A DNA stretch of 64,000 nucleotides from contig NIVC01000085.1 in the NCBI GenBank assembly GCA_002269645.1, forward strand, positions 1-64,000, given 5' to 3'. Below the pieces are notes generated by a model, which was given only the letters and a program-made list of their open reading frames with translations, had not been told where the DNA came from and did no database searches. Shown here in pieces: positions 9,091 to 62,650 of this stretch. Made by a program: the position numbers and the translations under genes. The stretch is from Macrostomum lignano (lineage: Eukaryota). Every line of letters begins with the position of its first letter. The stretch's first letter is position 1.

Positions 9091-9552
9091 CGCTATATTT
9101 TGTCGGCCTGAATCAAAATTACTAATTTCTTTATCAGGTCCTGAATGTTCCCTTGTCCCCCCCCCCGGTAGCGACAACCCCTGGGAGTGTCGAGAAAGTC
9201 GAGTATGGCGTCCTTCTATTTCCCTTGATTTGACTCGATTAAGAGCGCTTGTCAGGCGATCTACATGGGAGCCAACCCTCCCCCCAAGGCGCATCCTGTA
9301 CCTGCGTCTGATTCCATGTTGCCTCCTCTCAGTTGCCCGTCAGGCTCCCCCCAGCAGAAAACTGAACTAAACTGAGATGAGAATCTATCTAAGTTTTGAT
9401 TTTGTGCGATAAAAATTTCAACTTACTATTGAAATTACGAGCTACCAGACTTTGAAACGCAATGAAATTCAAATTCAATGAAATTGAAAAGTGCATTTAA
9501 GCGAGCATGTTTGTTTCCTCTATGTTTTCAAGTTTTAAATGGAAAAAAGAAT

Positions 9553-15500: not shown

Positions 15501-17008
15501 GGACTTCAGTGGGTAGCAAGAAGTTCTAGGCCTCTAGCAGTAAAGGAGGCTTTAGTAAAGTAATTAGCGACTTGCAGAGACATTTCTTGACCTACCCACT
15601 GTTCGTTTCTGGCGTGATTTTTGCCTAATAACTATTGGTTGAGCTTTGCTTACCACTCGTTTCACCTTGCAGCGAAGTCCTCATTCTGTTGCTAGTGAGT
15701 TAGTCAGGATTGAGTTATTTCACTTGCTCCGTTGCTGGTCTTGACATGGAATTTACTCGTAATATCGTAAATTTTCAGGCACTTTCCAGCTGCGGTTTCA
15801 CGGCTTCAGACGCGAGCCCACGGATTTCTACCTGAGACCGGCGCTGCTGCAGCAGGAGCGGCTGCAGACCAACGCCATCTGCATCGGAGACGAGATCGCC
15901 AGCGCCAGAATGCTCTCAACCGTCAAGGACCTCTTCACCTTGTACCCGGACAGGCCCAAGTTCGCCTTCACCTTTTTCAGCTCTTTGTCGCACGAGAATC
16001 AAGACCTGTCTCCCATGGACGCTGAGCTCGTCAAGTTCCTGGATTGGTTCGAGGCCGCCAACCTCAGCAGCAACACCAGCATCATTCTGATGTCGGACCA
16101 CGGCCAGCGGCACGGACCGCTGAGGAACTCCATGCAGGGCAAGCTGGAGGAGTCGCTACCGCTCATGAGCATCGCGCTGAGCAGGCAGCTGATGAGCCGC
16201 AAGAAAGATGCGGCAGAGATGCTGAGGACCAATGCAAATAGACTCACAACGCCTGTCGACATTCACAGGACTCTGTTGAACTTATCTGGACTCAGAGACT
16301 CTACCACGCTCGCAGCGGGTGGCGCCAGCCTCACATCGTACTCACTGATCGATGAGGCCGTTCCGGAGACTCGCAGCTGCTCAGATGCGGGCATTCCGAC
16401 TCACTGGTGCTCGTGTCTGCGGCTGAAGAAGATTCAAGAGCCGAGCTCGAACGAGCTGGCCGTGAGAGCCGCTCGGTTTGCAGTGAACCAGATGAACTCG
16501 GCCACTGAGCCGTTCCGACACCTGTGCCATGAGCTGCAGCTGGGGAATGTCACGGAGGCCGATGTCAGCTTGGTGAGTGACCGCTCGAGTCTTCCTGAGA
16601 CATATTTTTTGTGCACCAGCCCGAAATGGACGAGCACAGATTCGAACAACCCCCGAGCTACTCCCCCCCCCCTCTGCGACGCCGCAGGCAAGCGAGGATC
16701 TGGCTCGCCGCGAGCGCCACGTCAGCTGGCGCTACGTGGCCTACAACGCGGAGAACTCGGCGCTGCTCGCTGCCGGCTACCTGACGCTCCGCCTCGTCAC
16801 AGAGCCGAACGGAGGCCTATTTGAGGCGTCGGTGCAGTTCGGCCTGCAGCGATCGCGTTTCGGCAATCCTCTGCTGCTGCTGTCCTCCACTTCGGAGGCC
16901 TCCCGCATCAACCGGTACGGCAGTCAGGCTCACTGCGTCACTGAGGTCGCGCCTCACCTGCGAAAGTTTTGCCTGTGCCGTACTGGCGTCAGTGACAGTC
17001 CTTCATGA
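12597..17008 (+). CDS. DUF229-family (alkaline phosphatase/sulfatase superfamily) type II membrane protein, copy A. Exons 12597-12796, 12886-13613, 15779-16572, 16688-17008; 680 aa
   Basis: GT-AG junctions join in frame (phases 2,1,0; 2043 nt). N-terminal TM helix (FSLWSLVILSIACLSCTATILWFF). DUF229 motifs: LGLDSLSR, GTFQLRFHGF...PTDFYLRP, ILMSDHG, GKLEESLP, LTTPVDIH.TL, RSC.DAGIP.HWC.C, SRINRYG..A.C...LRKFC.C. Confidence 0.88.
14175..14300 (+). mobile_element. tRNA-derived SINE with CORE-like domain, in intron 2 of DUF229 copy A
   Basis: B-box GGTTCGACTC at 14198-14207, followed by GTGTCCTTGAGCAAGACACTTAACTCTGCATTGCTTCAGTTTCCTCAGCTGTAAAATGGG, which closely resembles the MIR/CORE consensus (GACCTTGGGCAAGTTACTTAACCTCTCTGTGCCTCAGTTTCCTCATCTGTAAAATGGG). 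Confidence 0.7.
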
Positions 17009-23059: not shown

Positions 23060-26000
23060 AGAGTCTACAGGTGTGTGAGAGTGTCTGAAGGTGTGTCAGA
23101 GAGTCTACAGGTGTGTCAGAGAGTCTACAGGTGTGTCAGAGAGTCCACTGGTGTGTCAGAGAGTCTACATGTGTATGCGAGTGTCTAAAGGTGTGTCAGA
23201 GAGTCTACAGGTGTGTGAGAGTGTCTGAAGGTGTGTCAGAGAGTCTACAGGTGTGTGAGAGTGTCTGAAGGTGTGTCAGAGAGTCTACAGGTGTGTGAGA
23301 GTGTCTGAAGGTGTGTCAGAGAGTCTACAGGTGTGTGAGAGTGTCTGAAGGTGTGTCAGAGAGTCTACAGGTGTGTGAGAGTGTCTGAAGGTGTGTCAGA
23401 GAGTCAAGGACGCTTAAGCAACTAGTTGACATTCCAGTCTGTTGACATTATGACACCCCATCGACTGCACGATCTGCAGGTTCAGCGTCATGACCCATTC
23501 CACTATCAGTGACATCAATATAGCGCCTCATGTTTCAGGAAGACTCAAGCGGTCACTCACCAAGCTGACATCGGCCTCCGTGACATTCCCCAGCTGCAGC
23601 TCATGGCACAGGTGTCGGAACGGCTCAGTGGCCGAGTTCATCTGGTTCACTGCGAACCGAGCGGCTCTCACGGCCAGCTCGTTCGAGCTCGGCTCTTGAA
23701 TCTTCTTCAGCCGCAGACACGAGCACCAGTGAGTCGGAATGCCCGCATCTGAGCAGCTGCGAGTCTCCGGAACGGCCTCATCGATCAGCGAGTACGATGT
23801 GAGGCTGGCGCCACTCGCTGCCAGCGTGGTAGAGTCTCTGAGTCCAGATAAGTTCAACAGAGTCCTGTGAATGTCGACGGGCGTTGTGAGTCTATTTGCG
23901 TTGGTCCTCAGCATCTCTGCCGCAGCTTTCTTGCGGCTCATCAGCTGCCTGCTCAGCGCGATGCTCATGAGCGGTAGCGACTCCTCCAGCTTGCCCTGCA
24001 TGGAGTTCCTCAGCGGTCCGTGCCGCTGGCCGTGGTCCGACATCAGAATGATGCTGGTGTTGCTGCTGAGGTTGGCGGCCTCGAACCAATCCAGGAACTT
24101 GACGAGCTCAGCGTCCATGGGAGACAGGTCTTGATTCTCGTGCGACAAAGAGCTGAAGAAGGTGAAGGCGAACTTGGGCCTGTCTGGGTGCAGGGTGAAG
24201 AGGTCCTTGACGGCCAAGAGCATTCTGGCGCTGGCGATCTCGTCTCCGATGCAGATGGCGTTGGTCTGCAGCCGCTCCTGCTGCAGCAGCGCCGGTCTCA
24301 GGTAGAAATCCGTGGGCTGGCGTCTGAAGCCGTGAAACCTCAGCTGGAAAGTGCCTGAAAATTCGCGATGTTAAATTCCATGTCAAGACCAGCAACAGAG
24401 CATTAAAAAGTAAAATCACTGGATCATGCAGGGCTAAAGTAGTGGTAAGCACAGCTCATTTAATAGTTATTAGGCAAAAGTCCCACACTGGAAACCGGAC
24501 ACCGGAGTAAATCAAGAAGAGTCTCGGCAACTCACTACTCGTAATTACTCAGCTAAAGCCGTCTTGACTGCGAAAGCCTCTGGACAGAGAGGCCTAAAAT
24601 CTTTGCTTCCCACTGAAGTCCAGGGGAGTTGAAAGACAGAATGACATTATTGTACAGAGTGCAGAGGATCGACTGAAGGACTAAGCCAGGGAATCCGAGA
24701 CGGAGACAGAATGTGGAGCAGCAACAGAGCTCTGACTGGATCGACGTGAATTGTGTACTTTGGCGGTTTGCGAATGGTGATCGCTGGGTAATCTTTAAGC
24801 GTCAGAATTGCTCACCCATGAAGTTGCCCTCCTCTCCGTACAGAGTGACGAAGCCCCGGTCCCGCAGGTCCTCGAAGATCCACCGAAGCGAGTCGTCCAG
24901 AAATCGAGCTCCAGCGAAGCCCTTCCGAGACTCGGGCATGTCGGCCTCCCGAACCCCCGTCAGGATGGGCAGCAGGGCGGCGGGAGTGCCGTCTCCCATG
25001 ATGTTGTACTGCTGCAGGGTGATGGCGCCAAGGCGGTCCTGCATGATGCGGCTGGCTCGGGGCAGCGACCGCAAGCTCTCGAGTCGGGACAGCGAGTCCA
25101 GGCCCAGCATGATGACGTTGCCGAGCTCCGAGCTGTCGGTCGGCGACCCCCCGCGACTGCCGGCTGCAGACGACGTCGCTCGCTTCACTCCGTAGTAGAC
25201 GGAGCTGTGGCGGCTGGTGCGGTCTGGCGACTGGCAGGAAGCTCGGAATCCCAGGCTGGGCAGCTTGTCTCCGCTGCGGAGCGGCCTGGCGCTGCCGAAC
25301 TCGCTCGACTGGTCGTCCAGCCACACGACGGGCTCCGCGGTGCAGTTGGCCGACGAGTACTCCGGCCTGAGGTAGACCCTGGACTCGGACACTCTCAGCC
25401 AGTTCTTCGAGGTTCCACGCTGACAGACATCGGCGGGAATCGGTCGGGGTCTGTTGGCTCGGACGAGCTGGTTGGTGACTGGCAATTTGGGTGAAACACA
25501 CCGCTGCGACTTGTGAGTGAGCTCGGGCAGGCTGAAGGATATTCGATGACAATGATGAGGAGAGTGCGAATGTTCAATTTTAGTCAGCCTTCGATTTTAA
25601 CTCACCTGCTAACACAACGTACTCAATTATCGAGCCAGCTACCCAACAAAAGAATCCTGGTCTATTCAATTATCACCTAGCAACCAAATCAATCATCCAG
25701 CAACAAAAGTTACCTAGCAACTAAATCATTCATCTAGCAACCAAATCATTCATCTAGCAACCAAATCAATCATCTAGCAACCAAATGAATCACCTAGCAA
25801 CCAAATGAATCACCTAGCAACGAAATCAATCATCTAGCAACCAAATGAATCACCTAGCAACCAAATGAATCACCTAGCAACGAAATCAATCATCTAGCAA
25901 CCAAATGAATCACCTAGCAACCAAATGAATCACCTAGCAACCAAACCAATCAACTAGCAACGAAATCAATCATTTAGCAGCCAAATAAATCGCCTAGCAA

Positions 26001-46086: not shown

Positions 46087-49000
46087 TTATTGCATAGAGC
46101 CGGCCCCATCTGAGCAGGGGGTGCGGTACAGCAGGTAATCCTTGATGCTGTTAGGTAGCGGCAGCTTGTTAATCTCTGGTAGCAACTGCGCTTGAGTACT
46201 ACCAGCGTTGCTAGGGCCGTTGCTAGGGGCGCTGTTGCCATGACGACTTGCTGCAGCAGCGGCGGCGGCGGCGGCGGCGGCTGCCCGACGCTGGAAGTGC
46301 TTGCGAATGACGGACCGGCAGAGCACCATTAGAGGCAGCGGCTCCGCTGCAGGGCGAGGGAGGGGGATATTAAAGATGAGGCATTTACGGAGACTGTGTT
46401 AGACACATGGAGCTGAGAAGTTCAGCATGTCTATTTGCTGGATTAGACTAGAGATAAGACTGCTGAGAGAGTAGATACTTAGCCTAGGGATTCAAGTGAT
46501 AGAAAAGGGAGAGAGAACGGAGAATACATCATAGGATCATGAAGAATAGATCATAGGATCATGAAGAATAGATCATAGGATCATGAAGAATAGATCATAG
46601 GATCAAAAAGAATAGATAATAGGATCATGAAGAATAGATCATAGGATCATGAAGAATAGATCATAGGATCAAAAAGAATAGATCATAGGACCATGAAGAA
46701 CAGATCATAGGATGATGAAGAATAGATAATAGGATCAAAAAGAATAGATCATAGGATCATGAAGAATAGATCATAGGATCATGAAGAATAGATCATAGGA
46801 TCATGAAGAATAGATCATAGGATCAAAAAGAATAGATCATAGGACCATGAAGAACAGATCATAGGATGATGAAGAACAGATCATAGGATCATAAAGAATA
46901 GATAATAGGATCATGAAGAATAGATCATAGGATCATGAAGAATAGATCATAGGATCAAAAAGAATAGATAATAGGATCATGAAGAATAGATCATAGGATC
47001 ATGAAGAATAGATCATAGGATCATAAAGAATAGATCATAGGATCATGAAGAATAGATCATAGGATCATGAAGAATAGATCATAGGATCATGAAGAATAGA
47101 TCATAGGATCAAAAAGAATAGATAATAGGATCAAAAAGAATAGATCATAGGATCATGAAGAATAGATCATAGGATGATGAAGAATAGATCATAGGATCAA
47201 AAAGAATAGATCATAGGATCAAAAAGAATAGATAATAGGATCATGAAGAATAGATCATAGGATGATGAAGAATAGATCATAGGATGATGAAGAATAGATC
47301 ATAGGATCAAAAAGAATAGATCATAGGATCAAAAAGAATAGATAATAGGATCATGAAGAATAGATCATAGGATGATGAAGAATAGATCATAGGATCATGA
47401 AGAATAGATAATAGGATCAAAAAGAATAGATCATAGGACCATGAAGAACAGATCATAGGATGATGAAGAATAGATCATAGGACCATGAAGAACAGATCAT
47501 AGGATGATGAAGAATAGATCATAGGATCAAAAAGAATAGATAATAGGATCAAAAAGAATAGATCATAGGATCATGAAGAATAGATCATAGGATCATGAAG
47601 AATAGATCATAGGATCATGAAGAATAGATCATAGGATCAAAAAGAATAGATCATAGGACCATGAAGAACAGATCATAGGATGATGAAGAACAGATCATAG
47701 GATCATAAAGAATAGATAATAGGATCATGAAGAATAGATCATAGGATCATGAAGAATAGATCATAGGATCAAAAAGAATAGATAATAGGATCAAAAAGAA
47801 TAGATAATAGGATCAAAAAGAATAGATCATAGGACCATGAAGAACAGATCATAGGATGATGAAGAATAGATCATAGGATCAAAAAGAATAGATAATAGGA
47901 TCAAAAAGAATAGATCATAGGACCATGAAGAACAGATCATAGGATGATGAAGAACAGATCATAGGATCATAAAGAATAGATCATAGGATCATGAAGAATA
48001 GATCATAGGATCAAAAAGAATAGATCATAGGATCAAAAAGAATAGATAATAGGATCAAAAAGAATAGATCATAGGACCATGAAGAACAGATCATAGGACC
48101 ATGAAGAACAGATCATAGGATCATGAAGAATAGATCATAGGATCAAAAAGAATAGATCATAGGATCAAAAAGAATAGATCATAGGACCATGAAGAACAGA
48201 TCATAGGATGATGAAGAACAGATCATAGGATCATAAAGAATAGATAATAGGATCATGAAGAATAGATCATAGGATCATGAAGAATAGATCATAGGATCAA
48301 AAAGAATAGATCATAGGATCAAAAAGAATAGATAATAGGATCAAAAAGAATAGATCATAGGATCAAAAAGAATAGATCATAGGATCAAAAAGAATAGATC
48401 ATAGGACCATGAAGAACAGATCATAGGATGATGAAGAATAGATCATAGGATGATGAAGAACAGATCATAGGATCATGAAGAATACATCATAGGATTATGA
48501 AGAACAGATCATAGGATCATGAAGAATACATCATAGGATTATGAAGAACAGATCATAGGATCATGAAGAATACATCATAGGATTATGAAGAATAGATCAT
48601 AGGATCATGAAAAACAGACCATAGGATCATGAAGAATAGATCATATGATCATGAAGAATAGACCATAGGACCATGAAGAATAGATCATATGATCATGAAG
48701 AATAGACCATAGGACCATGAAGAATAGATCATAGGATCATGAAGAGAGATCATAGGATCACCTAGAACAGAGCATAGACTCACGCTCTAATCCATTCAAA
48801 TAACGCAGCGTTATCTCGCAGTGGCCCCATACGGCGCTAACGCTGGGATAAAGCACTCGGCCTTTCAATCCGCGAAACGCGATACCCATGAACTGGCCTT
48901 CAACAACGAAGCTCAGCGTGCCTTCATCCATGTCTAACACAAGCAGGAAGCTGTCCGGCACTGGGAAATTCTCCTCGCTAGAGCTGACTGCGCCGCTACT

Positions 49001-49717
49001 CCAAGTAGGTGCGCACATCGTAGCCGGATAAGGAGTCCTACGACCATCGTGCAGGGCTCGATTTCGGCCCAGATCCCAGCCCCAGGAATCCGGATTGGAT
49101 CCGACCAGGGACTGATAACCGACGCAATGCAAAGGACAGTTAGCGGTGGCCACGCCAACCACAGCGTGTGTGCCGCGCTGCTTGCGAGACCAGTGAATCT
49201 GCCACACGTGCAGGCCGCGCGAGTAGCCTCGGGCACCCCGAATGCAGTCGGTGCTCTGCGCCACCGGCTGGCGGTGCAGAGTAAGACAGTCGTCCTCCTT
49301 GACGAAGATGTTCAACGAACGATCGTTGGGATTCCAGGCGTTCTCAACTGCCACCTGATGCGGGCACTGCGGCATGTCTAGCAGCAGGTCCAGTCTAGCC
49401 GGTTTCTCACAGTCCGGACTCAGCAGATTCTGCGAATTATTGTTGAATGGCAGCACAGAGGAGCCGCCTGCGCTGCTGCTGCCGCCGTCGCTGCTTACGT
49501 TGGAGCCGCCTCCGATGTTGCTGTTGCTATTGGAAACGTGCTGCATCAGTAGCTGATGATGCTGGTGACGGAGCTGGGCCTGCTGCTGCTGCTGCTGACT
49601 GCTATTATAGACTAAGTCTGCTACTTGCTGATGCGGCAAAACATTTTGTTGTTGCTGTTGCTGCTGCTGCTGCTGCTGTGGCCCAGAGTGCAGTCCTGTG
49701 ACTAAACGCTGGCCCAT
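46087..49717 (-). CDS. SPSB1: SPRY domain-containing SOCS box protein (SPSB1/SPSB4/gustavus type). Exons 49717-48784 and 46346-46087; about 397 aa
   Basis: N-terminal MGQ start. Conserved [54 protein letters not shown]...[50 protein letters not shown]. Junction GAG C|GTGAGT...CTGCAG|CG gives [13 protein letters not shown] (BC box), ending [13 protein letters not shown]. An alternative in-frame ATG is at 49735. Orthology among SPSB1/4 is not resolved. Confidence 0.92.
46530..48760. repeat. 22-bp minisatellite GATCATAGGATCATGAAGAATA filling the SPSB intron
   Basis: About 100 units occupying about 2.2 kb of the 2.4-kb intron. Confidence 0.97.
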
Positions 49718-51616
49718 CTTGTGAGCTTGGTGCATGTGAAACTCAGACTGGGGGAGGGGAGCAGCGAAGCGATGAGTTGCCTTTTAAAAAGAAGCAGTAA
49801 AGTGTCGCGTTGGAAACCAATTAATTGCTGGCAAGATTTGAAAGGATGGCAAGTGGTGTTTCGATTGCAGCAGTATTGCAAATTATTTGAGCACAGACAG
49901 CAGCAGTCTGCAGCGGGTGAGCACCAGTGTGCACATGCATAAATTCAATATTTGTTTATATATATATTAGTGTTCCGCTGTAGCTGTAGCTACGGCTACG
50001 GGATCCTACAGCAAATATGGTAAAATAGGTGCCTATGGCAGCTACAGATACACCCACATTAGCTAGCTGCTCTTATGGCTACGAATACAGAAATATGGTT
50101 GTTGTTGTCACAGTCCATAGATTCCTGTAGCCGTAGTTATTAATGTTAAAAAATTAAAAAAATATTAGAAACAGGTAGAGTAAAACAAACATACTTTTAG
50201 TAAACTGTATTATATATATTTATATATATATTATATTTATATATTTTGTATTAACTGCTACAGCTATGGTACATGGACCTTCCTTATGGCAAAACACTAA
50301 TACATACATATATATATATATATATTAGCTTACTTCATATCTTGAAGGTTGGGGTTTGATTCCTGACATACAACTCTGAATTGCTTACGTTCACCCAGCT
50401 ATAAAATCCCATTGTGCTAGCAGTGCCAGCATTAACTGGGATAATTGAGGGTGTGTATAACAATCAGTCCTTGGACTGAAAAGCTATATGCAGCCTTCAG
50501 ATATGACACAAAATAGTTACAGTTAAGCTATCAGTTGCATATCTGGGCTAACTGGGGCAGGTGTAATCAATCATTATTATTCAATTGTTAACAATGTATT
50601 AAGTAATAAAATAGGTTTACATATTAAAAACCTTATGGGTTATTTTATGATAAAGTCAACAAGAAGACTAAATTTTTTTTGCAGATAGTTAGACAGATTT
50701 TTTAATTTTCTTTTAGAAAATATTTTATATTTTCATTATTTGTATATTTCTATACAATTATATCCATTTAGAGTATATTTTTTGTAGTTTAACATACTAG
50801 TATACCAAGCCTACATGTTATCTTTCAGAAAAAACCTTTAAAGCAACAAAAATATCAAACTCGCAGGAAATTTTTTTTTAAATGTGTTCCATGCAAAACT
50901 ACCAGAAATGACTATTACCAAGTTTTCCTTTGTTAGCCTACTTTACTATAATCAATAATTATCACTAAAGCAGTTGAAATTGACATAGGTTGGTACCTAT
51001 AATACTTCTATAAAAAATAACAGAACATTTTTTTTGTTTTAGAGATGTGGCAATTTGAAGTAAAAAAATGTGCCCTAAAAACGACCATTATTCTCATGGA
51101 AATACCCTTATGAATACCTATATAATTTTTCTTTTATCTATAATGGTCTTAATAGTTATACTTTCATAGAAGCATTTGTTAACAAAAATATTAATTCACA
51201 CTTGCAGCAATAAGATTATTTGTTATATAGAATGAAAGCTATAGATGCTATGTCAAATTTAAGTTCTTGTTTTCAAATTGAAACTTAATAATCATGTTTT
51301 TATCTATTGAAACGTTCATAATATAGGCCTAGTGTTTCTATCTATAAGGAGTAGAGGCCTGATAAACAATTAGAATGCAATCAATATTATTCTTGCAATA
51401 TTAAAACATAGACTTTTTATTTGATCTATTGGTAAGGAGTTGGACAAGACCTTGATCTCAATCTTAGTCTTAATTGTCAAGATCTTAGCACTATTTTTAA
51501 TTTTGATCTCGGTTTCAAAACTTTCAAGATCTTGAAAAAAGTTAAGAATTGCAATTATATAGGCTTAACTATTTGTGACTATGATATTCCTAATGATATT
51601 CCTATTTGTTTCTAGG

Positions 51617-53344: not shown

Positions 53345-53800
53345 GTTTTTTAAACTCATTTTAGTGCCGCAGGCACTACTACTACATGTATTAGCGCGCG
53401 CCACAGGCACCAATTTAGCGCCACTGCAGCGCGCCGCAAGTACAATTTTAGCGCCGCAGTCACCACTGTAGCGCCGCAGGCACCACTTAGCGCCGCAGAC
53501 ACCATTTTGGCGCCACATTCATCAATTTAGCGCCTCAAGTACTATTTTAGCGCCGCTGGAACCATTTTAGCGCCGCATGCGGGTACCCTTTAGCGCCGAA
53601 AGTACCACTTAGCGCCGCAGACACCATTTTGACACCGCAGGCGCTATGTTTTGTTGGCCTGAAGCAAAATTATTGACTTCTATAACAGATCAACAAAAGG
53701 TGGGGTGGGGGGTACAAAGCATTGGCATGTCTCTCCCATATAGCTTTTACTGGAGGGACATGTCCCCCCTGTCCCCCCCCCCGCAGTGGCGACGCCCTTT
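53345..53800. mobile_element. Short non-autonomous element with a degenerate TTAGCGCCGCAG repeat; same family as the element hosting the 5.6-9.1 kb array
   Basis: About 13 degenerate units ending CAGGCGCTATGTTTTGTTGGCCTGAAGCAAAATT (cf. 9087 CAGGCGCTATATTTTGTCGGCCTGAATCAAAATT), then a ...TGTCCCCCCCC.CAGTGGCGACGCCCT terminus. Confidence 0.65.
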
Positions 53801-54084
53801 TCGACAAGGCAATCGCGTGTGCAGTCCAAATTGCACAGCAGAAATTTCAGGATAAATCAGGCCGATAAAATATTTATAGCACGATCAAGGAAGGTTTCTT
53901 CTGAGACTAAAAAAGAATTCATTCAAATTCAAAGTTACTTCAGTTGTACACACACGTGTACTGCCTGCATGTTTTTTTGCATGTAGAGCTCTGTTTATAT
54001 ATAAATTTGAGCGCCTGTATCTGTCTATGCGGCGAAAAAACTTTACCAAGGACCAAGTGGTAATTAAGTAACAAAAATGGCTTG

Positions 54085-57000
54085 CAGGGACAACTAAAAC
54101 CCTCGGGACGCGAAACGAGCCAATTCATGGCAAAAAATCTGAGGGGCTCGCTTAAAAGTATTGTTCTATGGCTTTTTCAAGTCTTCTCTGCTATCAGGCA
54201 TTAACGGTTAGATTAAATAGTAAAGCGAGGCAATGTCGAGTATTTAATTTAAGGAATAGGAACCAGTGATATAATTACAATGTATTTACAATAAAGTAAC
54301 CGCCATATCAACAAAAAACTCCAACGGCAAGAAGATAAAAGATGAAAGCGAAGATGAAACTCCAACGGCAAGAAGATAAAGGATGAAAGCGAAGATGAAA
54401 CTCCAACGGCAAGAAGATAGAAGCAAATACGGTACTCCAAGGACAAGATGACACAAACAGTCAGTAGCTCGTACATAAAGGAAACGCTGGAACTTCACCT
54501 ACTGAGCATCTAACTTCCGAAGCTTTCTATCATGGGATGTCGTCGGTATTGGTGGGAGTTTTGACGAGCGTCTTACTAGTCCTTTGAAAAAAACGTTGGC
54601 TAGCCGACGAGACACACTGTCCATGCTGAACTGTGTCTTAGTTGGAAAGTAAAAGTCCTTAATAACATAAAACAGCTTCTGCACGCGAGTTGCGCACGTA
54701 GGAGAGTGCAGAATAAAACTGCTGTAGCAGAGACAGGATAAGTCTAACAGCCATTGTGGAGGATGACAAAGCTTTCCGCGAGATAACTCTTCAGTGAATT
54801 CGCTGGCTGGAATGCTCGTCTCTGATATCAAATCTGTTCCTTTGATGCCTTCTTTAGTCGCTGTATAACCTGTCAATTTCCAATAAAGCACGGTTTGAAT
54901 TGTTTTTATGAGATTGTGTAAAACCTCGTTGTGAATTAAATTTTAATTAATATCCAGCTTACCTGCGATATAGTAGAGCGAAGCCATCTCCGAAATGGAA
55001 AGCTCCTCTGATTTAGCAGCACAATTATCAATGGTCGCCAGTTCAATTTCATTCAGCTGTTCATTGCAACATTTGCTCCGATCGTGCTTGTAGTCTGCTA
55101 ATTCAAGGGATGCGAATAACTTCATTCGTCGGAGTCGAGCACTGAGCAGCACTTGCTCCACAGATACATAGTAGTTGCCGCCGCTCATTTGGCGATACAC
55201 GCCAAACTCAGCCTCAAGTGGATCACTGTGAAAGTCAGCCAGCAGAACGTAGCTGATTCGTGGGTCGGACAAAAGAACCTCACACATCTCACAGGCTCCG
55301 CGCAGTGAGTTTACTAGCGCTGACTTGGTCTCGGGCGTCAATGAATGATGGCGAGCTCGGCCTTTTCCACAATGTGTCGAATCAAACGAATCCGCGAGCG
55401 CGCTAAGAAATTGTATGCTTTCATCTTGAACGGAATAGACTGGTCGCCTGTCCGGATCCCGTAGTCGTGCGTGTAGATCAGGATTTTTACAATTGACAAT
55501 TTTCCAGAATCTCACTATGGTTTTGATAAATTCCGCAGTGTCTGAGTATCCATCACACTTCAATGCAGCGGCAACCCTTTCATCGAGAACTTGGAGAGCG
55601 AGACTGACTTTAGTTTTCTGAATGCTTGTGGGATAACAGGCCTCATGAGTTAGACATGTGCGCTTGACTACGTGGTCTTTCTCCATTTGGTACAGGCGTA
55701 CCACGTCTGACCATTTAGCGGATATCTGTCTGTCAGCGCCAGGAGGTTGAATTCTCAGAATTCCATTCGCTTCCATTTGCCAATTGTTGCGAATGCATTT
55801 GATAATGTGAACGAAATCGAAAAGCATGAAGAATTCCGACTCCTGTGCAGCATCCGTTCCAATCCATGGCTTCTCTCTTCCATCGCTAAATAAAGCAAAA
55901 CACTTGCGGTTGGTAGGGTGATTGTCGCTGACGAGAGCAACGACACGGCCACCGTTGTTGTTAATTGCTTTAATGCATTGGCTGACGCATTTTCGCAGAA
56001 ACTCCGCAGACAAAATGTATGTCGGCAATAGTCGGACTACAAACGGTTTTCCACCAAGTAATGGCTTTACCATTATAGCCAAAATTGTCCTAGCAACCTG
56101 GTCCGGATCGTCGACGGCTCGACCCAGAAGGTGACGGCATCGATATCGAACGGACGGTTGTATGTACATTTCGTCAAACATAATTACGCAGTTTCGCTGA
56201 GCTCCTGATAGACTAGCAAAAACTGACTGGATCACATCGGCTGCGTCGGTTTCTGTGCCAACTTCTCCTGTACCTGCTAGTTGCAGCTGCAGCGTTCGGG
56301 GATGAGGCAATGGCAATAGCTTCCGTAGGTAAGAGTAAGCCGAACTACTGATCAAGTAGAGCAATGCTGACTGTCGCACTAGTGAAATGTCATAGCGGCG
56401 ATTGTTCCGATTTACTAATGTAAGGCTAAGTTGTCGAATCAAAAACTGAAGCGACGGATCCAAATCAGAGTCAGAATCTATATCATCACTGATTCTACTA
56501 ACAAACGCTTCGACTTCACGTTGGGGATTGGCGTCGGAATTTTTGCACCGCACGACAACAGCATCCAGTTGCGACCAGCGCTTGAGTGTCGGTTGAAATC
56601 CCAACAAGTCTCGAACCGAAATCGGTGTATGCAGTTTGAATGCACGAATCAGAAAGTTGGGTGAGACAAAAATTCGAACAGACAGGTCTCCATCTTTATC
56701 TAACGTAAACAAGTAAACATCTTCGTTCAGAATAGCTGTGTTCAGTGCATGTCGAGATACGACATCCGAATTTTTCACCTCAGCTCGAAAACTTTCCCAT
56801 GCCGGCAAAAAATCAAGCAGCTGAAAAGCGTCCATCTCATCGATGTCGCCGCACCTCGCGTCAGAAAGAACACCGCGCTTTTCGGCCTGTCGGTCCTGGT
56901 CTAAAATAAGGGTAAAAATAAAAGTAAGATAATTGTGAGCGGCAAAATCGATATAGACGCTAAGTGTTGAGCAATCTTTAAGTTACGTACCTTGGTTCTG

Positions 57001-57560
57001 AACAAAACACGAGCTAGGAACTCCATTAAAAACAGAAGGAGGATTAATTGGCCTTTCGGTAGAGTTTTTCTTGACCATTGGAGCATCGCTTGGCCAATGC
57101 TTTACGCACACGCCCATATTGTCAGTCACTCTCTAAAATAATAAATTTTGGGTTTCAAGTTGTTTGGACGAGACTGGCATGCAGAATTGAAGCGGAATTA
57201 TGCAGCAGAAATGACAGCAAATGATCTGGTTTCTTACCTGGAGAATATTTGGCAGCGCCTTTCTCCATCGCTCTCGCTCCTGTGGATCTCTGGGAAACGC
57301 AAATGTCCGTGTTCGAACGGCTTCAGAGTTGTAATTTGACGAGCACGGAAATACGCTGCACTTTCTTGGCATTTCATCAAGTGAATAAAAAATGCTTCTC
57401 TTGATATAGTTCAGCTTAGCTTCACTGCTGGCCGCAGCTTAATTTGCCTGATAGCAGAGAAGACTTGAAAAAGCCATAGAACAATACTTTTAAGCGAGCC
57501 CCTCAGATTTTTTGCCATGAATTGGCTCGTTTCGCGTCCCGAGGGTTTTAGTTGTCCCTG
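54085..57560 (-). mobile_element. Full-length P-superfamily DNA transposon (3476 bp) with 116-bp perfect TIRs and 9-bp TSD AATGGCTTG
   Basis: 54085-54200 equals the reverse complement of 57445-57560 (CAGGGACAACTAAAACCC...CTATCAGGCA). AATGGCTTG lies at 54076-54084 and at 57561-57569. Encodes a THAP9/P-type transposase. Confidence 0.95.
54499..57372 (-). CDS. THAP9/P-element transposase. Exons 57372-57238, 57132-56991, 56900-54963, 54869-54499; 861 aa
   Basis: C2CH THAP domain (MPRKCSVFPC...FAFPRDPQERERW...GVCVKHW...P), SAYSYLR...LPHPRTL, catalytic FDEM, VSDN, FDFVHIIKCIRNNW, QK.KVSLA.Q, SDPLEAEFG..RQ..G, YIAGY across the last junction. All junctions are GT-AG and in frame (2586 nt, no internal stop). 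Confidence 0.9.
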
Positions 57561-57859
57561 AATGGCTTGGAAAATGTTGCTAAATCGGTTAGGAAGCAAT
57601 AAAAAATGCACTATTTCGAATCTATTTCGGGAATATTTAGGCTCTGAATAAGAGATTTCAGCTTTTAGAAGACAATTGATTAGACTCCTTTAATTGTTAC
57701 TCATTTAACAACATTGTAAGGTGGAAGCGGGGCGCAGGTGTTAGAGTCAATTTTGCATTACGAGTATAATTGGTTAGCAGAGTGGCGTACCGCGCACGCA
57801 AGAATTTTATATATTTAAATGGAGCGGACCACAAACAATGTTTGGTGTCGTGTGGTGGC

Positions 57860-57940: not shown

Positions 57941-59177
57941 ATGAACCCCTACCTACCCCTGTCCCCTGCGTTGCCTCTTCATTGGCGTGTCCCACATGTA
58001 CAGTATACATGCATGTTTTCAGGCTTAACATCCTAATGTACATACTAATGAAACCAAAAACTGCGGAAACTATAAAATCAAAAGTAATTTTAAGCATTAA
58101 AATTTTAAGTCGTTACAATTCACGCGAAGACATCCTATAACCCCATAGAAACCCCCCAGGCGTGACGTACATCAGCCCTGCAGTCGTCATCATTCCAGAC
58201 GACGAGCTTCCCATAGAAACCAATTACCCACTATAGGAGTTGCCATGCATCGAAAGGAAGGGCGTATACGTGTGCAATTCAATGTACTTTTTATAGCTGA
58301 TGCGCCACTTTATCTTCCCTTACACAGGTACCGACCACTAACTGCAGCGTTCCAACCCGTCTACCCATAGTTACGATAGAAGTTCGTCAAATGCACGTGA
58401 TGGCGCTGCGCTCATGTTGCATGCTTCATGGCGCTGCACTTTTCGGCCGCCGCAGCCTCCCATAATGTTCGACTTTCTGCGTTTTCACAGGCCCCCACAC
58501 AGAGAGAGAGATGAATTGGCAAAGTGACTGGAAGTGCATGCTTCCTGCCTCAGACCGGAAAAGGTGAATTACTTCCCATCTGTAAAAAAAGTACAGCCTA
58601 ACCCCTATATTTAGCAGCAATCTAGCCCTGACCTTAGTATATACTGCAGTACCCGAAGCAGCTGAGGTGAAATTCCTCAAGGTTTAGCTAGCGAATAAAA
58701 CGTTCGAAGTCGGATGTACTATTAACTGGGCAAAGTTCCTGTTGGCCGCTATTGTTCAAATTCCCCCTCTAAAAGAATTACAATAATCCTTTCCATAATA
58801 TATGGCTCATAATTGGTGATGCATTCCTGTCTCTGTATGAGTATTCTACCTGATAATAGAAAACCCTGGCTACGCCCTAAAACTGGCTTTATTAAGTGAT
58901 GCAGTCATTATCGAAGACTGCAGCAGACACCGAATTAAACGAACGGCAATGGTTTTTGCCGTTGATAAGATCGAACTTCACCTCTCGGTACATACAGCTC
59001 GGCCTGTTTTTGTAGTTAATTTTTGTAAGATTTGAAGAGTGATCATGCCTATTTTAGTATAGGCGCATGCGTTATAATGATATAATATCAATGGCCATGG
59101 CCCAGAACAGATGCTTTTACTTTCGCCTTGGCTGGCTATTGCTAATCGACAAGAATTATAATTTCAAGTTGGTCAAG

Positions 59178-61007
59178 ATGCAAAGGTGCCTACTGGTCAA
59201 AGTTGTGCTCCTAAACTGTTGTTTGGCTGTGATCCACACTGCACAAGGCTCGACTTTGTTGGATAAGACCGACGATCAAGCTGCCAGAAGTGCTGCTGCT
59301 CAAGGTGTTGCTACCCCGTCTATCTCAGACTCAGAGACAGATTTCTACTCAGAACCGCCGATAACTTCCTTGTCATCCGATGAAGATGACACCTCCGCCG
59401 AAGGTCCGACGACCACTATTTTACAAACGAACTCAGATTTTTCAACAAGCAGAGGATCTGCCGCATCATCACCATCGACAGCACCAAATATTTCAGTAAC
59501 GGAAGCTACCACAACGGAGGCACCCGACGAATCAGGAACTCCAAGAACTGTCAAATCTACCACAACAGTTGAACCATCAACTGATACAGAAACTTTGAGC
59601 ACTGTCAAATCTACCACAACAATTGAACCATCAACTGATGCAGAAACTTTGAGCACTGTCAAATCTACCACAACAGTTGAACCATCAACTGATGCAGAAA
59701 CTTTGAGCACTGTCAAATCTACCACAACAGTTGCAACATCAACTGATGCAGAAACTTTGAGCACTGTCAAATCTACCACAACAGTTGCACCATCAACTGA
59801 TGCAGAAACTTTAAGCACTGTCAAATCTACCACAACAGTTGCACCATCAACTGATGCAGAAACTTTGAGCACTGTCAAATCTACCACAACAGTTGAACCA
59901 TCAACTGATACAGAAACTTCGAGCACTGTCAAATCTACCACAACAGTTGAACCATCAACTGATACAGAAACTTTGAGCACTGTCATATCTACCACAACAG
60001 TTGAACCATCAACTGATACAGAAACTTCGAGCACTGTCATATCTACCACAACAGTTGAACCATCAACTGATGCAGAAACTTTGAGCACTGTCATATCTAC
60101 CACAACAGTTGCAACATCAACTGATGCAGAAACTTTGAGCACTGTCAAATCTACCACAACAGTTAAACCATCAACTGATTCAGAAACTTTGAGCACTGTC
60201 ATATCTACCACAACAGTTGAACCATCAACTGATGCAGAAACTTTGAGCACTGTCATATCTACCACAAAAATTGAACCATCAACTGATGCAGAAACTTTGA
60301 GCACTGTCAAATCTACCACAAAAATTGAACCATCAACTGGTGCAGAAACTTTGAGCACTGTCAAATCTACCACAAAAATTGAACCATCAACTGATGCAGA
60401 AACTTTGAGCACTGTCAAATCTACCACAACAGTTGCACCATCAACTGATGCAGAAACTTTGAGCACTGTCAAATCTACCATAACTAATTCAGAACCTTTG
60501 AGCACATCTACCACAGCAGTATCATCACCGGAATTGGAGACTTCAGCTACAGAGTCATCTAGCACGAAAATGTCAACAGCTCAAACAACTTTTGCTGCCG
60601 TAACCTTATCCACGGATCCTCGGACTGCGGAACCTACTTCAACAACCGAGTCTTTGGTCCCCACACCACAGAGCTTGCTAACGCCAGAACAATGCCAAGC
60701 AAGATGTGACGTCACTTTCAATCTGCCAAGCAAAATCGCGGTGTCAGTAAGTTCAGCCATCATCGCCATTCTATTAGTAGTTATTGTCGTCTTGCTTACA
60801 AAATACCGTCAGCCAACAAAATTTCGGGTGCACACGAGCAGACCTGCAGCGGGCTCATCCTTTGGCAGCTGCAGTATTAACGACGGCAAATCGACATTTT
60901 GTGAAGAGTTCAATTTTCAGACCAGTCCAGAATGGGCAATGCAAATGGTAGCGATCGATAGAGACACCAGCTTCACGGCCGTGCAGAGCTACAATTGGGA
61001 TGAATAA
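59178..61007 (+). CDS. Mucin-like type I transmembrane glycoprotein with about 17 x 18-aa Thr/Ser-rich repeats (ETLSTVKSTTTVEPSTDA); about 609 aa
   Basis: Signal peptide MQRCLLVKVVLLNCCLAVIHTAQG from the ATG at 59178 (the ORF extends upstream to 59067). 54-bp in-frame repeats at about 59535-60480. CQARC juxtamembrane pair, TM helix IAVSVSSAIIAILLVVIVVLLT, then KYR and a cytoplasmic tail. Confidence 0.8.
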   Translation: MQRCLLVKVVLLNCCLAVIHTAQGSTLLDKTDDQAARSAAAQGVATPSISDSETDFYSEPPITSLSSDEDDTSAEGPTTTILQTNSDFSTSRGSAASSPSTAPNISVTEATTTEAPDESGTPRTVKSTTTVEPSTDTETLSTVKSTTTIEPSTDAETLSTVKSTTTVEPSTDAETLSTVKSTTTVATSTDAETLSTVKSTTTVAPSTDAETLSTVKSTTTVAPSTDAETLSTVKSTTTVEPSTDTETSSTVKSTTTVEPSTDTETLSTVISTTTVEPSTDTETSSTVISTTTVEPSTDAETLSTVISTTTVATSTDAETLSTVKSTTTVKPSTDSETLSTVISTTTVEPSTDAETLSTVISTTKIEPSTDAETLSTVKSTTKIEPSTGAETLSTVKSTTKIEPSTDAETLSTVKSTTTVAPSTDAETLSTVKSTITNSEPLSTSTTAVSSPELETSATESSSTKMSTAQTTFAAVTLSTDPRTAEPTSTTESLVPTPQSLLTPEQCQARCDVTFNLPSKIAVSVSSAIIAILLVVIVVLLTKYRQPTKFRVHTSRPAAGSSFGSCSINDGKSTFCEEFNFQTSPEWAMQMVAIDRDTSFTAVQSYNWDE

Positions 61008-61349: not shown

Positions 61350-62650
61350 TCAGGTTCGCAAAGCTGTGTGTCAGGTCCGTCAAGCTGTGTATCAGGTCCG
61401 TCAAGCTGTGTGTCAGGTCCACCAAGCTGTGTGTCAGGTCCACAAAGCTATGTGTCAGATCCTCAAAGCTATGTGTCAGATCCTTAAAGTTGTGTCAGCT
61501 CTCCCCAGCTGTGTGTCAGTAGAACCAAGCTGTGTGTCAGGAGAGCCAAGCTGTGTGTCAGGAGAGCCAAGCTGTGTGTCAGATGAGCCAAGCTGTGTGT
61601 CAGGTCCTAAAAGCTATGTGTCAGATCCTAAAAGCTATGTGTCAGATCCTCAAAGCTATGTGTCAGGTCTTCAAAGCTATGTGTCAGGTCTGCTAAGCGC
61701 TGTACTAGTGGAGACAAGCTGTTTGTCAGCTCTGCCAAGCTGTGTCAGGATTGCCAAACTGTGTGTCAAGATTACCAAGCTGTGTGTCAGGATTGCCAAG
61801 CTGTGTGTCAGGAGAGCCAAGCTGTGTCAGGATTGCGAAGCTGTGTGTCAGGAGAGCCAAGCTGTGTGTCAGGAGAGCCAAGCTGTGTGTCAGGAGAGCC
61901 AAGCTGTGTGTCAGGAGAGCCAAGCTGTGTGTCAGGAGAGCCAAGCTGTGTGTCAGGAGAGCCAAGCTGTGTGTCAGGAGAGCCAAGCTGTGTGTCAGGA
62001 GAGCCAAGCTGTGTGTCAGGAGAGCCAAGCTGTGTGTCAGGAGAGCCAAGCTGTGTGTCAGGAGAGCCAAGCTGTGTGTCAGGAGAGCCAAGCTGTGTGT
62101 CAGGAGAGCCAAGCTGTGTGTCAGGAGAGCCAAGCTGTGTGTCAGGAGAGCCAAGCTGTGTGTCAGGAGAGCCAAGCTGTGTGTCAGGAGAGCCAAGCTG
62201 TGTGTCAGGAGAGCCAAGCTGTGTGTCAGAAGAGAGCCAAGCTGTGTGTCAGAAGAGAGCCAAGCTGTGTGTCAGAAGAGAGCCAAGCTGTGTGTCAGAA
62301 GAGAGCCAAGCTGTGTGTCAGGAGAGCCAAGCTGTGTGTCAGAAGAGAGCCAAGCTGTGTGTCAGAAGAGAGCCAAGCTGTGTGTCAGAAGAGAGCCAAG
62401 CTGTGTGTCAGAAGAGAGCCAAGCTGTGTGTCAGGAGAGAGCCAAGCTGTGTGTCAGGAGAGCCAAGCTGTGTGTCAGGAGAGCCAAGCTGTGTGTCAGA
62501 AGAGAGCCAAGCTGTGTGTCAGAAGAGAGCCAAGCTGTGTGTCAGAAGAGAGCCAAGCTGTGTGTCAGAAGAGAGCCAAGCTGTGTGTCAGGAGAGAGCC
62601 AAGCTGTGTGTCAGGTCCACGAATCTTTGTTTCAGGAGAGCCAATCTGTG
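61350..62650. repeat. 21/23-bp minisatellite CCAAGCTGTGTGTCAG(GAGAG/AAGAGAG)
   Basis: Degenerate left flank, homogeneous 21-mer core, mixed 21/23-mers on the right. Confidence 0.96.

What the first reader, a model, noticed from the sequence alone, without database searches (positions are those of the whole stretch)
54085..57560. Apparently intact, recently inserted autonomous P-element with a 4-exon THAP-DDE transposase
Seen: 116-bp TIRs with zero mismatches, an intact TSD, and three GT-AG introns that splice to an uninterrupted 861-aa protein with a C2CH THAP domain and D(FDEM)/D(SDN)/E(DPLE) triad plus the DxxH motif. Known: active P-superfamily elements are rarely characterised outside Drosophila, whose P has 31-bp TIRs and also four exons. 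Inference: a potentially active native transposon and a candidate transgenesis/mutagenesis tool for this lineage.
Basis: partly seen in the sequence, partly recalled or inferred. Interest (0 to 1): 0.8.

Follow-up and report, generated by a model that had tools for sequence, protein, structure and literature searches.

The report
Intact P-type transposon in a flatworm
This is a complete, undamaged copy of a young, multi-copy P-element-type "jumping gene" in the regenerating flatworm Macrostomum lignano; it is the only one of six copies examined that can still encode the full enzyme, so it may still be mobile, but that has not been tested.

Summary
Window 54085-57560 is a 3,476-bp element with perfect 116-bp terminal inverted repeats and a 9-bp target-site duplication (AATGGCTTG). 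A minus-strand gene with three GT-AG introns splices to 861 aa.

The protein has the P-transposase domains: THAP, HTH, and a split RNase H domain with an insertion domain. Its D335/D418/E655 triad and D454xxH457 motif align to D230/D303/E531 and D339 of Drosophila P transposase. A predicted structure matches 6p5a/6pe2 (TM 0.78-0.79).

The window is contig NIVC01000085.1 of Macrostomum lignano (Mlig_3_7). The RNA-seq-guided GenBank model on this copy (BOX15_Mlig002392g11) uses introns 1 and 2 exactly as predicted. It is truncated by a non-canonical 29-nt "intron" that removes E655.

Four further independent insertions (five loci) are 98.2-99.8% identical, each with an 8-bp duplication, and all carry frameshifts. 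The window copy has only two private substitutions, both in the 3' UTR. Substitutions shared between copies are 7 synonymous to 1 non-synonymous.

So this is the least decayed copy of a recently active P-superfamily family. It is a new member of a known kind. Mobility is untested, and piggyBac transgenesis already works in this animal.

The parts
54076..54084 (.). Target-site duplication, left copy (AATGGCTTG)
   Evidence: Read directly. Identical 9-mer at 57561-57569. Flanks compared.
54085..54200 (.). Terminal inverted repeat at the 3' end of the element in gene orientation; starts CAGGGACAACTAAAA
   Evidence: 116 nt, 100% complementary to 57445-57560. Same termini in five other loci.
54316..54423 (.). 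Subterminal 41-nt tandem repeat (2.6 units) in the 3' UTR; unit number varies between copies
   Evidence: TRF, 95% matches. One extra 41-nt unit in L006/L007 and 321 extra nt in L010.
54499..54869 (-). Exon 4 (aa 739-861 plus stop): C-terminal region
   Evidence: Colinear with full-length homologs up to the C-terminal RK..KL motif.
54870..54962 (-). Intron 3 (93 nt, GTAAGC..ACAG, phase 1)
   Evidence: Removal restores the conserved YIAGY motif. Same position and phase in the relative L001. Not covered by the GenBank CDS.
54963..56900 (-). Exon 3 (aa 93-738): linker, HTH, RNase H-like catalytic domain with insertion domain. Codons: D335 = 56173-56175, D418 = 55924-55926, E655 = 55213-55215
   Evidence: Pfam PF12017, PF21787, PF21788. 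Alignments to DmTNP. AlphaFold model pLDDT 88.8; Foldseek to 6p5a/6pe2 E=1.6e-18, TM 0.78-0.79.
55207..55235 (-). 29-nt segment that the GenBank model BOX15_Mlig002392g11 treats as an intron. It encodes the DPLE motif with catalytic E655 and is present in this genomic copy
   Evidence: The 681-aa GenBank protein is reproduced exactly by removing it. Its boundaries are not GT-AG. The same 29 nt are deleted in the genomic copies L006/L007.
56901..56990 (-). Intron 2 (90 nt, GTACGT..TTAG, phase 1)
   Evidence: Used in the RNA-seq-guided GenBank model. Same position in L001 and L003.
56991..57132 (-). Exon 2 (aa 46-93): second half of the THAP domain (C54, H57, PPSVF motif)
57133..57237 (-). Intron 1 (105 nt, GTAAGA..TTAG, phase 0), splitting the THAP domain
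   Evidence: Used in the GenBank model. Same position in L001.
57238..57372 (-). Exon 1 (aa 1-45): first half of the THAP domain (C5, C10)
57445..57560 (.). Terminal inverted repeat at the 5' end of the element in gene orientation; 72 nt separate it from the ATG
57561..57569 (.). Target-site duplication, right copy (AATGGCTTG)

Best explanation
The region is a full-length, structurally intact, autonomous-type DNA transposon of the P superfamily in Macrostomum lignano (contig NIVC01000085.1, positions 54085-57560). It is the least decayed known copy of a young, multi-copy family.

Shown:
- It has perfect 116-bp TIRs and a flanking target-site duplication.
- Its four-exon gene encodes an 861-aa protein with a THAP zinc finger, an HTH domain, and an RNase H-like domain split by an alpha-helical insertion domain. 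The complete DDE triad and the D(2)H signature of P transposases are present.
- The family is transcribed and spliced at introns 1 and 2.
- It has inserted at five or more different sites, four of them with 8-bp duplications.
- Its coding sequence evolved under purifying selection while the family diversified.

Inferred, by homology with Drosophila P transposase:
- The THAP and HTH domains bind sites in the long TIRs.
- The protein pairs the two ends, cuts the element out and pastes it into a staggered 8-9-bp target cut.
- This copy can supply transposase to itself and to the frameshifted copies.

Not shown: present-day mobility, GTP dependence, and any regulation.
For: Anatomy:
- TIRs, TSD, exons and the 861-aa product.
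- Pfam THAP, Tnp_P_element HTH, TNP-like RNaseH_N and TNP-like GBD, all above the curated cut-offs.
- Family profile vs DmTNP 6p5a E=3.2e-33 over chain residues 114-542. D335/D418/E655 and D454xxH457 align to D230/D303/E531 and D339. Those residues are experimentally required in DmTNP (PMC8230255).
- AlphaFold model pLDDT 88.8. Best PDB folds are the P transposase strand-transfer complexes, E=1.6e-18, TM 0.78-0.79. Next is Hermes at E=1e-5.

Host and locus:
- A neighbouring DUF229 ORF is 98% identical to an M. lignano protein.
- The element plus 500-nt flanks is 100% identical to NIVC01000085.1.

Splicing:
- GenBank protein PAA91470.1 equals the predicted protein across junctions 1 and 2. That annotation is RNA-seq, genome-guided.
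- Junction 3 is supported by homologs.

Mobility of the family:
- Loci L006/L007, L008, L009 and L010 carry full-length copies with 0.23-1.18% substitutions relative to the window copy, at different sites.
- Their 8-bp TSDs are TATTATTT, GCTCCATC, ACTCTATA and TTGTCAGT.

Integrity and youth:
- All five other loci carry frameshifts or a stop codon; the window copy has none.
- Private substitutions: window 2 (both 3' UTR) against 6, 14, 23 and 34.

Selection:
- Substitutions shared by independent copies are 7 synonymous to 1 non-synonymous, against 23% synonymous expected.
Against: - No direct evidence of transposition by this copy, and no empty-site allele could be retrieved.
- RNA-seq-based models cannot assign transcripts to this copy, because reads multi-map among copies that are 98-99.8% identical.
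- Intron 3 has no transcript evidence in the data available here.
- Pfam does not detect the P-element C-terminal domains (PF21789, PF12596) at E<=0.01.
- DmTNP D444, important for activity, aligns to K559 here, so GTP use may differ.
- This copy and L008 lack 10 nt just inside the 5' TIR that the three other insertions have. The effect is unknown.
- The assembly is PacBio/Canu based. Some 1-nt frameshifts in other copies lie in short homopolymers and could be errors, so this copy may not be the only intact one.
Confidence: 0.85

Rival explanations
1. The copy is structurally intact but no longer mobile. It may be silenced (for example by piRNAs), or disabled by changes that do not break the reading frame, such as the 10-nt subterminal deletion shared with L008 or amino-acid changes fixed in this subfamily. 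The family would then be recently extinct rather than active.
For: All five other loci examined are broken. The 10-nt difference lies 5 nt inside the 5' TIR. There is no evidence here of polymorphic insertions. The D444 equivalent is not conserved.
Against: This copy has only 2 private substitutions in 3,476 nt and L008 has 6, and the two differ by 0.23%, so the subfamily that lacks the 10 nt has itself transposed recently. Purifying selection on the CDS. All catalytic residues are present.
Confidence: 0.35
2. It is a domesticated THAP9-like host gene rather than a transposon.
For: THAP9-type domesticated P transposases exist in vertebrates (PMC8230255, PMC10983969). The gene is annotated as an ordinary protein-coding gene in GenBank.
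Against: Perfect TIRs and a TSD. Near-identical copies with the same termini lie at four other, unrelated sites, each with its own TSD, and most of them are decayed.
Confidence: 0.01
3. The apparent perfection is an assembly artefact. The interior of this copy would be a consensus of reads from several copies, collapsed or polished, so the real locus may be as damaged as the others.
For: Mlig_3_7 is a Canu assembly of PacBio, 454 and Illumina data from a repeat-rich, partly duplicated genome. A consensus sequence naturally looks intact and has few private differences.
Against: The other copies in the same assembly kept their private differences and indels. A 3.5-kb element is normally spanned by single PacBio reads. 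The flanks and TSD are unique.
Confidence: 0.07
4. The 29-nt gap in the annotated transcript is genuine RNA processing. This copy would then mainly make a 681-aa protein with THAP, HTH and the insertion domain but without the catalytic glutamate, acting as a repressor like the Drosophila 66-kDa and KP proteins.
For: The GenBank models on three copies that contain the 29 nt (g3, g5, g11) all skip it. Truncated THAP-containing P proteins are repressors in Drosophila (PMC7776569).
Against: The gap has no GT-AG or AT-AC boundaries and is only 29 nt. Exactly these 29 nt are deleted in the genomic copies g7/g9 (L006/L007), whose model is an uninterrupted ORF. Reads from those copies mapped onto intact copies explain the gap. 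The g7/g9 copies have other frameshifts and their ORF lacks the THAP domain.
Confidence: 0.05

Closest known systems
Drosophila melanogaster P element and its transposase (DmTNP; PDB 6p5a/6pe2)
   Same: - Cut-and-paste TIR element of about 3 kb whose gene has four exons.
- N-terminal THAP, HTH, and RNase H domain split by an alpha-helical insertion domain.
- DDE triad and D(2)H motif align residue for residue.
- Fold match TM 0.78-0.79.
- The family makes 8-bp TSDs.
   Different: - Only about 17% identity in the structural alignment.
- 116-bp TIRs instead of 31 bp; no 11-bp sub-TIRs identified.
- 861 aa against 751 aa.
- An extra, confidently predicted beta-sheet module between THAP and HTH.
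- This copy has a 9-bp TSD.
- Pfam C-terminal P-element domains are not detected.
- GTP dependence and intron-3 tissue regulation are unknown.
Galileo (P superfamily, Drosophila)
   Same: A P-superfamily transposase with a THAP domain, combined with unusually long TIRs that carry several THAP-binding sites (PMC3688188).
   Different: Galileo TIRs are much longer and internally repetitive, and its TSD is 7 bp. All known Galileo transposase genes needed reconstruction, whereas this copy is intact.
Divergent P element of Drosophila buzzatii and its MITE BuT5
   Same: A P element whose insertions show both 8-bp and 9-bp TSDs. The full D. buzzatii copy has a 9-bp TSD (PMC3698922). This mirrors the 8-bp and 9-bp mix seen here.
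   Different: Its TIRs are 3 bp, it is an insect element, and it has an abundant MITE partner. No MITE partner was seen in the roughly 160 kb of M. lignano sequence held here.
Zebrafish Pdre2 elements and THAP9 transposases
   Same: P-type transposases outside insects, with experimentally shown excision activity (PMC10983969; PMC8230255).
   Different: Those are single-copy host genes acting on internally deleted elements, and integration was not obtained. Here the transposase gene still lies inside its own TIRs in a young multi-copy family.
Second P-like family of M. lignano (locus L003, gene BOX15_Mlig018626g1)
   Same: Same genome. 8-bp TSD (TGAATAGG). Termini CACGGACTACTTAA against CAGGGACAACTAAA here, and a shared internal GGACGCGA(A/C)ACG motif. 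Intron at the same place as intron 2.
   Different: 38% protein identity. The element is about 5.2 kb. Its TIRs are imperfect (85% over 46 nt).

Membership tests
P superfamily of DNA transposons | N-terminal C2CH THAP zinc-finger DNA-binding domain | tested here: met
   Pfam PF05485, 28.4 bits (cut-off 23.9), aa 5-65. Family profile vs THAP1/THAP2 structures E~3e-12. C5, C10, C54 and H57 read in the sequence.
P superfamily of DNA transposons | P-transposase HTH domain between THAP and the catalytic domain | tested here: met
   Pfam PF12017, 27.4 bits (cut-off 23), aa 242-297.
P superfamily of DNA transposons | RNase H-like catalytic domain interrupted between beta5 and alpha4 by an alpha-helical insertion domain (the GBD of DmTNP) | tested here: met
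   Pfam PF21787 (aa 305-428) and PF21788 (aa 457-566). Profile vs 6p5a E=3.2e-33. Foldseek top hits 6pe2/6p5a, E=1.6e-18, TM 0.78-0.79.
P superfamily of DNA transposons | Signature string: DDE triad plus the [C/D](2)H motif after the second D | tested here: met
   D335=D230, D418=D303 and D454xxH457=D339 motif. E655=E531. Conservation. The signature is defined in PMC8230255.
P superfamily of DNA transposons | TIRs and a 7-8-bp (occasionally 9-bp) target-site duplication | tested here: met
   116-bp perfect TIRs. 8-bp TSDs at four other insertions and 9 bp at this one. 8-bp and 9-bp variation is documented for a Drosophila P element.
P superfamily of DNA transposons | C-terminal domain of P transposase (Pfam PF21789 / PF12596) | tested here: inconclusive
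   No Pfam hit at E<=0.01. However, aa 650-861 are conserved and colinear in full-length relatives, and the profile alignment to DmTNP runs to chain residue 542.
P superfamily of DNA transposons | GTP as cofactor; 17-nt staggered donor cleavage | not testable with these tools
   These are biochemical properties (PMC7776569). The insertion domain is present, but DmTNP D444 aligns to K559, so GTP binding cannot be inferred.
P superfamily of DNA transposons | Evidence of mobility: several copies at unrelated sites | tested here: met
   Five independent insertion sites on different contigs, 0.23-1.84% pairwise substitutions. Gene names run to g11.
Canonical Drosophila P element family (sensu stricto) | 31-bp TIRs, 11-bp sub-TIRs, close sequence similarity to the 751-aa transposase | tested here: not met
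   116-bp TIRs. Single-sequence E=3.6e-9 and about 17% identity to DmTNP. It is a different family within the superfamily.
Domesticated THAP9 genes | Single-copy, syntenic host gene without TIRs or TSD | tested here: not met
   TIRs, a TSD and multiple dispersed copies.

The most novel reading that the evidence does not exclude
This copy is a live master element of a P-type family that is still transposing in Macrostomum lignano laboratory or wild lines. It would be the first native, autonomous cut-and-paste element demonstrated in a flatworm and one of very few naturally active P-superfamily elements outside Drosophila. It would be usable, as helper plus 116-bp-TIR vector, for insertional mutagenesis. 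It might also come with P-like regulation by truncated products or piRNAs.
Probability: 0.3. Interest if true: 0.65.

Novelty: new member of a known kind. Interest (0 to 1): 0.45.

Why it matters
M. lignano is the flatworm model in which stable transgenesis works. Minos did not integrate through its transposase there (PMC5730564), and piggyBac works only at proof-of-principle level (PMC8717057).

A native, possibly active P-type element matters in three ways. It offers a candidate vector and mutagen adapted to the host. It is a possible source of spontaneous mutations and of differences between lines. It also gives a second system, after Drosophila, in which a P-type element still sits within its own ends in a young family, so P-transposase features such as long TIRs, GTP use and repression can be compared.

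There is also a practical correction: the GenBank model for this gene (PAA91470.1, 681 aa) is truncated by a mapping artefact and hides the intact 861-aa reading frame.

The find is not conceptually new. P-like transposases are widespread (4,127 relatives at E<=0.001), and no mobility has been shown.

Tried and rejected
1. Exact-sequence look-ups of the window's ORFs (transposase exon 3, the 646-aa repeat ORF, the SPRY ORF) found nothing.

2. The word-indexed protein search missed the near-identical M. lignano proteins and suggested that the closest relative was 53% identical. The exhaustive HMMER search and the cluster look-up corrected this.

3. I tried to reach an orthologous or homeologous empty site through the neighbouring SPRY (gustavus-like) gene. 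The only M. lignano hit, L004, is a paralog that shares nothing but tandem repeats with the window. Presence/absence polymorphism could therefore not be tested.

4. Insertion into another transposon: the flanks share no inverted or direct repeats with each other. They match only a local 20-nt minisatellite family.

5. Domesticated-gene reading: rejected (TIRs, TSD, dispersed copies).

6. The 29-nt "intron" as real splicing: rejected as the main reading. It has non-canonical ends and the same 29 nt are a genomic deletion in g7/g9.

7. GTP-contact residues: the structure paper (PMC6948148) is not held. The only residue I could place, D444, is not conserved in the HMM alignment. GTP dependence is left open.

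8. MITE derivatives: the terminal 28-mer occurs only at the ends of the full-length copies in the window and in the 10 loci held. That is too little sequence to exclude MITEs.

9. No paper linking Macrostomum with P elements or THAP transposases was found in the library.
Full report
**What is there.** Window 54085-57560 is bounded by two 116-nt arms (54085-54200 and 57445-57560) that are 100% complementary. The terminal 28-mer occurs nowhere else in the window, and none is expected by chance. Immediately outside both arms lies the same 9-mer, AATGGCTTG (54076-54084 and 57561-57569). On the minus strand, an ATG at 57372 opens a gene with these parts:
- exon 1: 57372-57238
- exon 2: 57132-56991
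- exon 3: 56900-54963
- exon 4: 54869-54499
- three GT..AG introns of 105, 90 and 93 nt

A 41-nt tandem repeat (2.6 units, 54316-54423) lies in the 3' UTR.

**What the protein is.** Pfam finds four domains, all above the curated cut-offs:
- THAP, aa 5-65
- the P-transposase HTH, aa 242-297
- TNP-like RNase H N-terminal domain, aa 305-428
- TNP-like GTP-binding insertion domain, aa 457-566

The only solved structure found by sequence is Drosophila P transposase (6p5a, E=3.6e-9). In that alignment FD335EM, SD418N and D454FVH457 sit on D230, D303 and the D339xxH motif. A profile of 12 family members raises the match to E=3.2e-33 and extends it to chain residue 542. There DPLE655 sits on E531. D230, D303 and E531 are the experimentally defined triad, and [C/D](2)H is part of the superfamily signature (PMC8230255). 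These residues are invariant or nearly so in the family.

An AlphaFold2 model of the exon-3 product (630 aa, 37-sequence alignment) has mean pLDDT 88.8. Its best PDB matches are the P-transposase strand-transfer complexes (E=1.6e-18, TM 0.78-0.79). Hermes is far behind. Membership of the P superfamily is therefore established by sequence, signature residues and fold.

The Pfam C-terminal P-element domains are not detected. DmTNP D444 aligns to a lysine. GTP dependence is left open.

**Are the introns real?** Three lines of evidence bear on this.
- The spliced protein is colinear, without gaps of more than one residue at any junction, with P0002, an 860-aa homolog encoded by a single uninterrupted ORF. 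Junction 3 rebuilds the family-wide motif YIAGY.
- A 53%-identical relative from another organism (L001) has GT-AG introns at the same three positions and phases.
- Decisively for introns 1 and 2, the GenBank protein PAA91470.1 (BOX15_Mlig002392g11, 681 aa) is identical to the predicted protein through both junctions. That gene model lies on this very copy (see the next section). The annotation is a genome-guided RNA-seq assembly made with StringTie/TACO (PMC5730564).

Intron 3 has no transcript evidence in what I could reach.

**Where the window comes from.** A DUF229 ORF at 15910-16824 is 98% identical to a Macrostomum lignano protein. The locus of PAA91470.1 (L005 = NIVC01000085.1:51103-61372, assembly GCA_002269645.1, line DV1) is 100% identical to the element plus 500-nt flanks (4,476 of 4,476 nt). 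The contig coordinates of the element equal the window coordinates. The window is therefore the first 64 kb of that contig.

**The GenBank model is truncated by an artefact.** Its span (2,270 nt) and its 681-aa product are reproduced exactly by removing introns 1 and 2 plus a 29-nt segment (55207-55235). That segment encodes part of DFHSDPLEAEF, including E655, and its removal shifts the frame. The segment has no GT-AG or AT-AC ends. The same 29 nt are missing from the genomic DNA of copies g7/g9 (L006/L007), whose model is a continuous ORF. The simplest reading is that RNA-seq reads from the deleted copies were aligned to the intact copies with a gap, and the gap was called an intron. The genomic sequence of the window copy contains the 29 nt and encodes the full protein.

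**The family.** An exhaustive HMMER search found 4,127 relatives at E<=0.001. It also found M. lignano proteins that are 90-96% identical. These belong to a cluster named BOX15_Mlig002392g3, g5, g6, g7, g9 and g11, plus Mlig023154g1. Five further loci were fetched. All contain full-length copies with the same termini.

| Locus | Gene copy | Substitutions vs window | TSD | Damage |
|---|---|---|---|---|
| L008 | g3 | 0.23% | GCTCCATC | 1-nt deletion in a CCCC run; a nested 1.4-kb element |
| L009 | g5 | 0.81% | ACTCTATA | two 1-nt deletions and a 4-nt insertion |
| L006/L007 | g7/g9 | 1.08% | TATTATTT | several indels, including the 29-nt deletion; one insertion present on two contigs |
| L010 | g6 | 1.18% | TTGTCAGT | a stop at Q97 and a 1-nt deletion |

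The family therefore makes 8-bp duplications like P, and the window copy is a 9-bp exception. The same 8-bp and 9-bp mix is documented for the D. buzzatii P element and BuT5 (PMC3698922). Some 1-nt deletions lie in short homopolymers of a PacBio-based assembly and may be errors. Among the six loci, only the window copy is free of any lesion.

**Age and selection.** Perfect TIRs alone do not date an insertion, because the two ends are inherited from the donor and not regenerated. The copy comparison does date it. Counting states found in one copy only, the window copy has 2 private substitutions and no private indel. Both substitutions are in the 3' UTR (element positions 3112 and 3308 = window 54449 and 54253). 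The other copies have 6 (L008), 14 (L009), 23 (L006) and 34 (L010). The window copy is thus essentially identical to the inferred founder of its subfamily.

Substitutions shared by independent copies, which arose while the element was still propagating, are 7 synonymous to 1 non-synonymous. About 23% synonymous would be expected from random change, and the binomial probability is about 2e-4. The transposase was therefore under purifying selection during the family's spread.

**How it most likely works.** This part is inferred from DmTNP (PMC7776569).
- The THAP and HTH domains would recognise sites within the long TIRs.
- The ends would then be paired and cleaved by the DDE site.
- Finally the element would be joined to a target cut with an 8-bp (sometimes 9-bp) stagger.

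The terminal CA(G/C)GGAC(A/T)ACT(A/T)AA and an internal GGACGCGA(A/C)ACG motif are shared with a second, 38%-identical P-like family of M. lignano (L003, 8-bp TSD TGAATAGG). They are candidate protein-binding sites. The intact copy could mobilise the frameshifted copies in trans. None of this was tested.

**Comparison and novelty.** This is a P-superfamily element, but not a member of the Drosophila P family proper. It has about 17% identity in the structural alignment, 116-bp TIRs against 31-bp, and 861 aa against 751 aa. Its long TIRs recall Galileo. Its position outside insects recalls zebrafish Pdre2/THAP9, where only excision was obtained (PMC10983969). I found no paper on P-type elements in Macrostomum. 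UniProt already auto-names some copies "Transposable element P transposase".

In M. lignano, Minos did not integrate by transposition and piggyBac works at proof of principle. A native element would therefore be a useful addition, not a first.

**Verdict.** This is a new member of a known kind, of moderate interest. Mobility of this copy remains the open question.

Noticed in passing
L008:6924-8310 (M. lignano NIVC01001637.1): Copy g3 of the family carries a nested element of about 1.39 kb. It has its own TIRs (CACAGAAGATAGACAGAATGGCCGATC...), an 8-bp TSD (CTGGTTCC), and ORF fragments with THAP-like C..C / C..H motifs. It looks like a short, probably non-autonomous THAP-bearing transposon that inserted very recently, into a copy only 0.23% diverged.
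   Followed up: partly
L003:4700-9925 (M. lignano NIVC01000293.1): A second P-like family in the same genome (gene BOX15_Mlig018626g1, 38% identical). It is about 5.2 kb, has an 8-bp TSD (TGAATAGG), and has imperfect TIRs whose first 14 nt and an internal GGACGCGAnACG motif resemble those of the window element. The annotated 650-aa model stops before the catalytic glutamate, although the coding sequence continues to about aa 858.
   Followed up: partly
window 55207-55235; GenBank PAA91470.1: The public gene model on this copy is truncated to 681 aa by a 29-nt non-canonical 'intron'. This is probably caused by RNA-seq reads from the 29-nt-deleted copies g7/g9. The models for g3 and g5 have the same artefact.
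   Followed up: yes
window 56340-56470 (aa ~144-186 of the transposase): The structure model predicts, with pLDDT above 90, a small beta-sheet module between the THAP domain and the helical/HTH region. It has no counterpart in the resolved part of the Drosophila P transposase structure. Its function is unknown.
   Followed up: no
window 54316-54423; L006/L007, L010: The 41-nt subterminal tandem repeat varies in copy number between copies of the element. The window has 2.6 units, L006/L007 have one more unit, and L010 has about eight more.
   Followed up: partly
window 15760-16603 and 23530-24373; 13025-13600 and 24829-25404: A large inverted duplication (844 nt at 98% and 576 nt at 96%) carries two copies of a DUF229/sulfatase-like gene in opposite orientation.
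   Followed up: no
window 46367-~48800; 59547-60484; 61361-62000+; 53431-53630 and 5600-9140: The window is rich in tandem arrays:
- about 100 units of 22 nt;
- a 54-nt array (17 units, 96% matches) inside a 646-aa ORF (59067-61007);
- a 21-nt array inside a 464-aa ORF with a weak ice-binding beta-roll hit;
- a GCGCC-containing 20-nt minisatellite next to the insertion site, which recurs at 5.6-9.1 kb.
   Followed up: no
window 48758-49735 (-): A 325-aa ORF with a SPRY domain, 55-67% identical to gustavus/SPSB1/4 proteins of many animals. The only M. lignano protein recovered (BOX15_Mlig001905g1) is a 57%-identical paralog on another contig.
   Followed up: partly
P0303 (UniRef A0A1I8FWY0) and P0245 (MetaClust, 3,385 aa): Two gene models embed fragments of this or a related P transposase (61% and 90% identity) inside unrelated proteins; P0303 is a C2-domain protein of M. 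lignano, and the source organism of P0245 is not recorded. They are probably chimeric annotations across transposon insertions.
   Followed up: no
L002:1-30 and 3108-3137: The Logan contig that encodes the intronless 860-aa homolog ends in 30-nt perfect inverted repeats. This is what an assembly graph breaking inside long TIRs would give, so long TIRs may be common in this clade.
   Followed up: no
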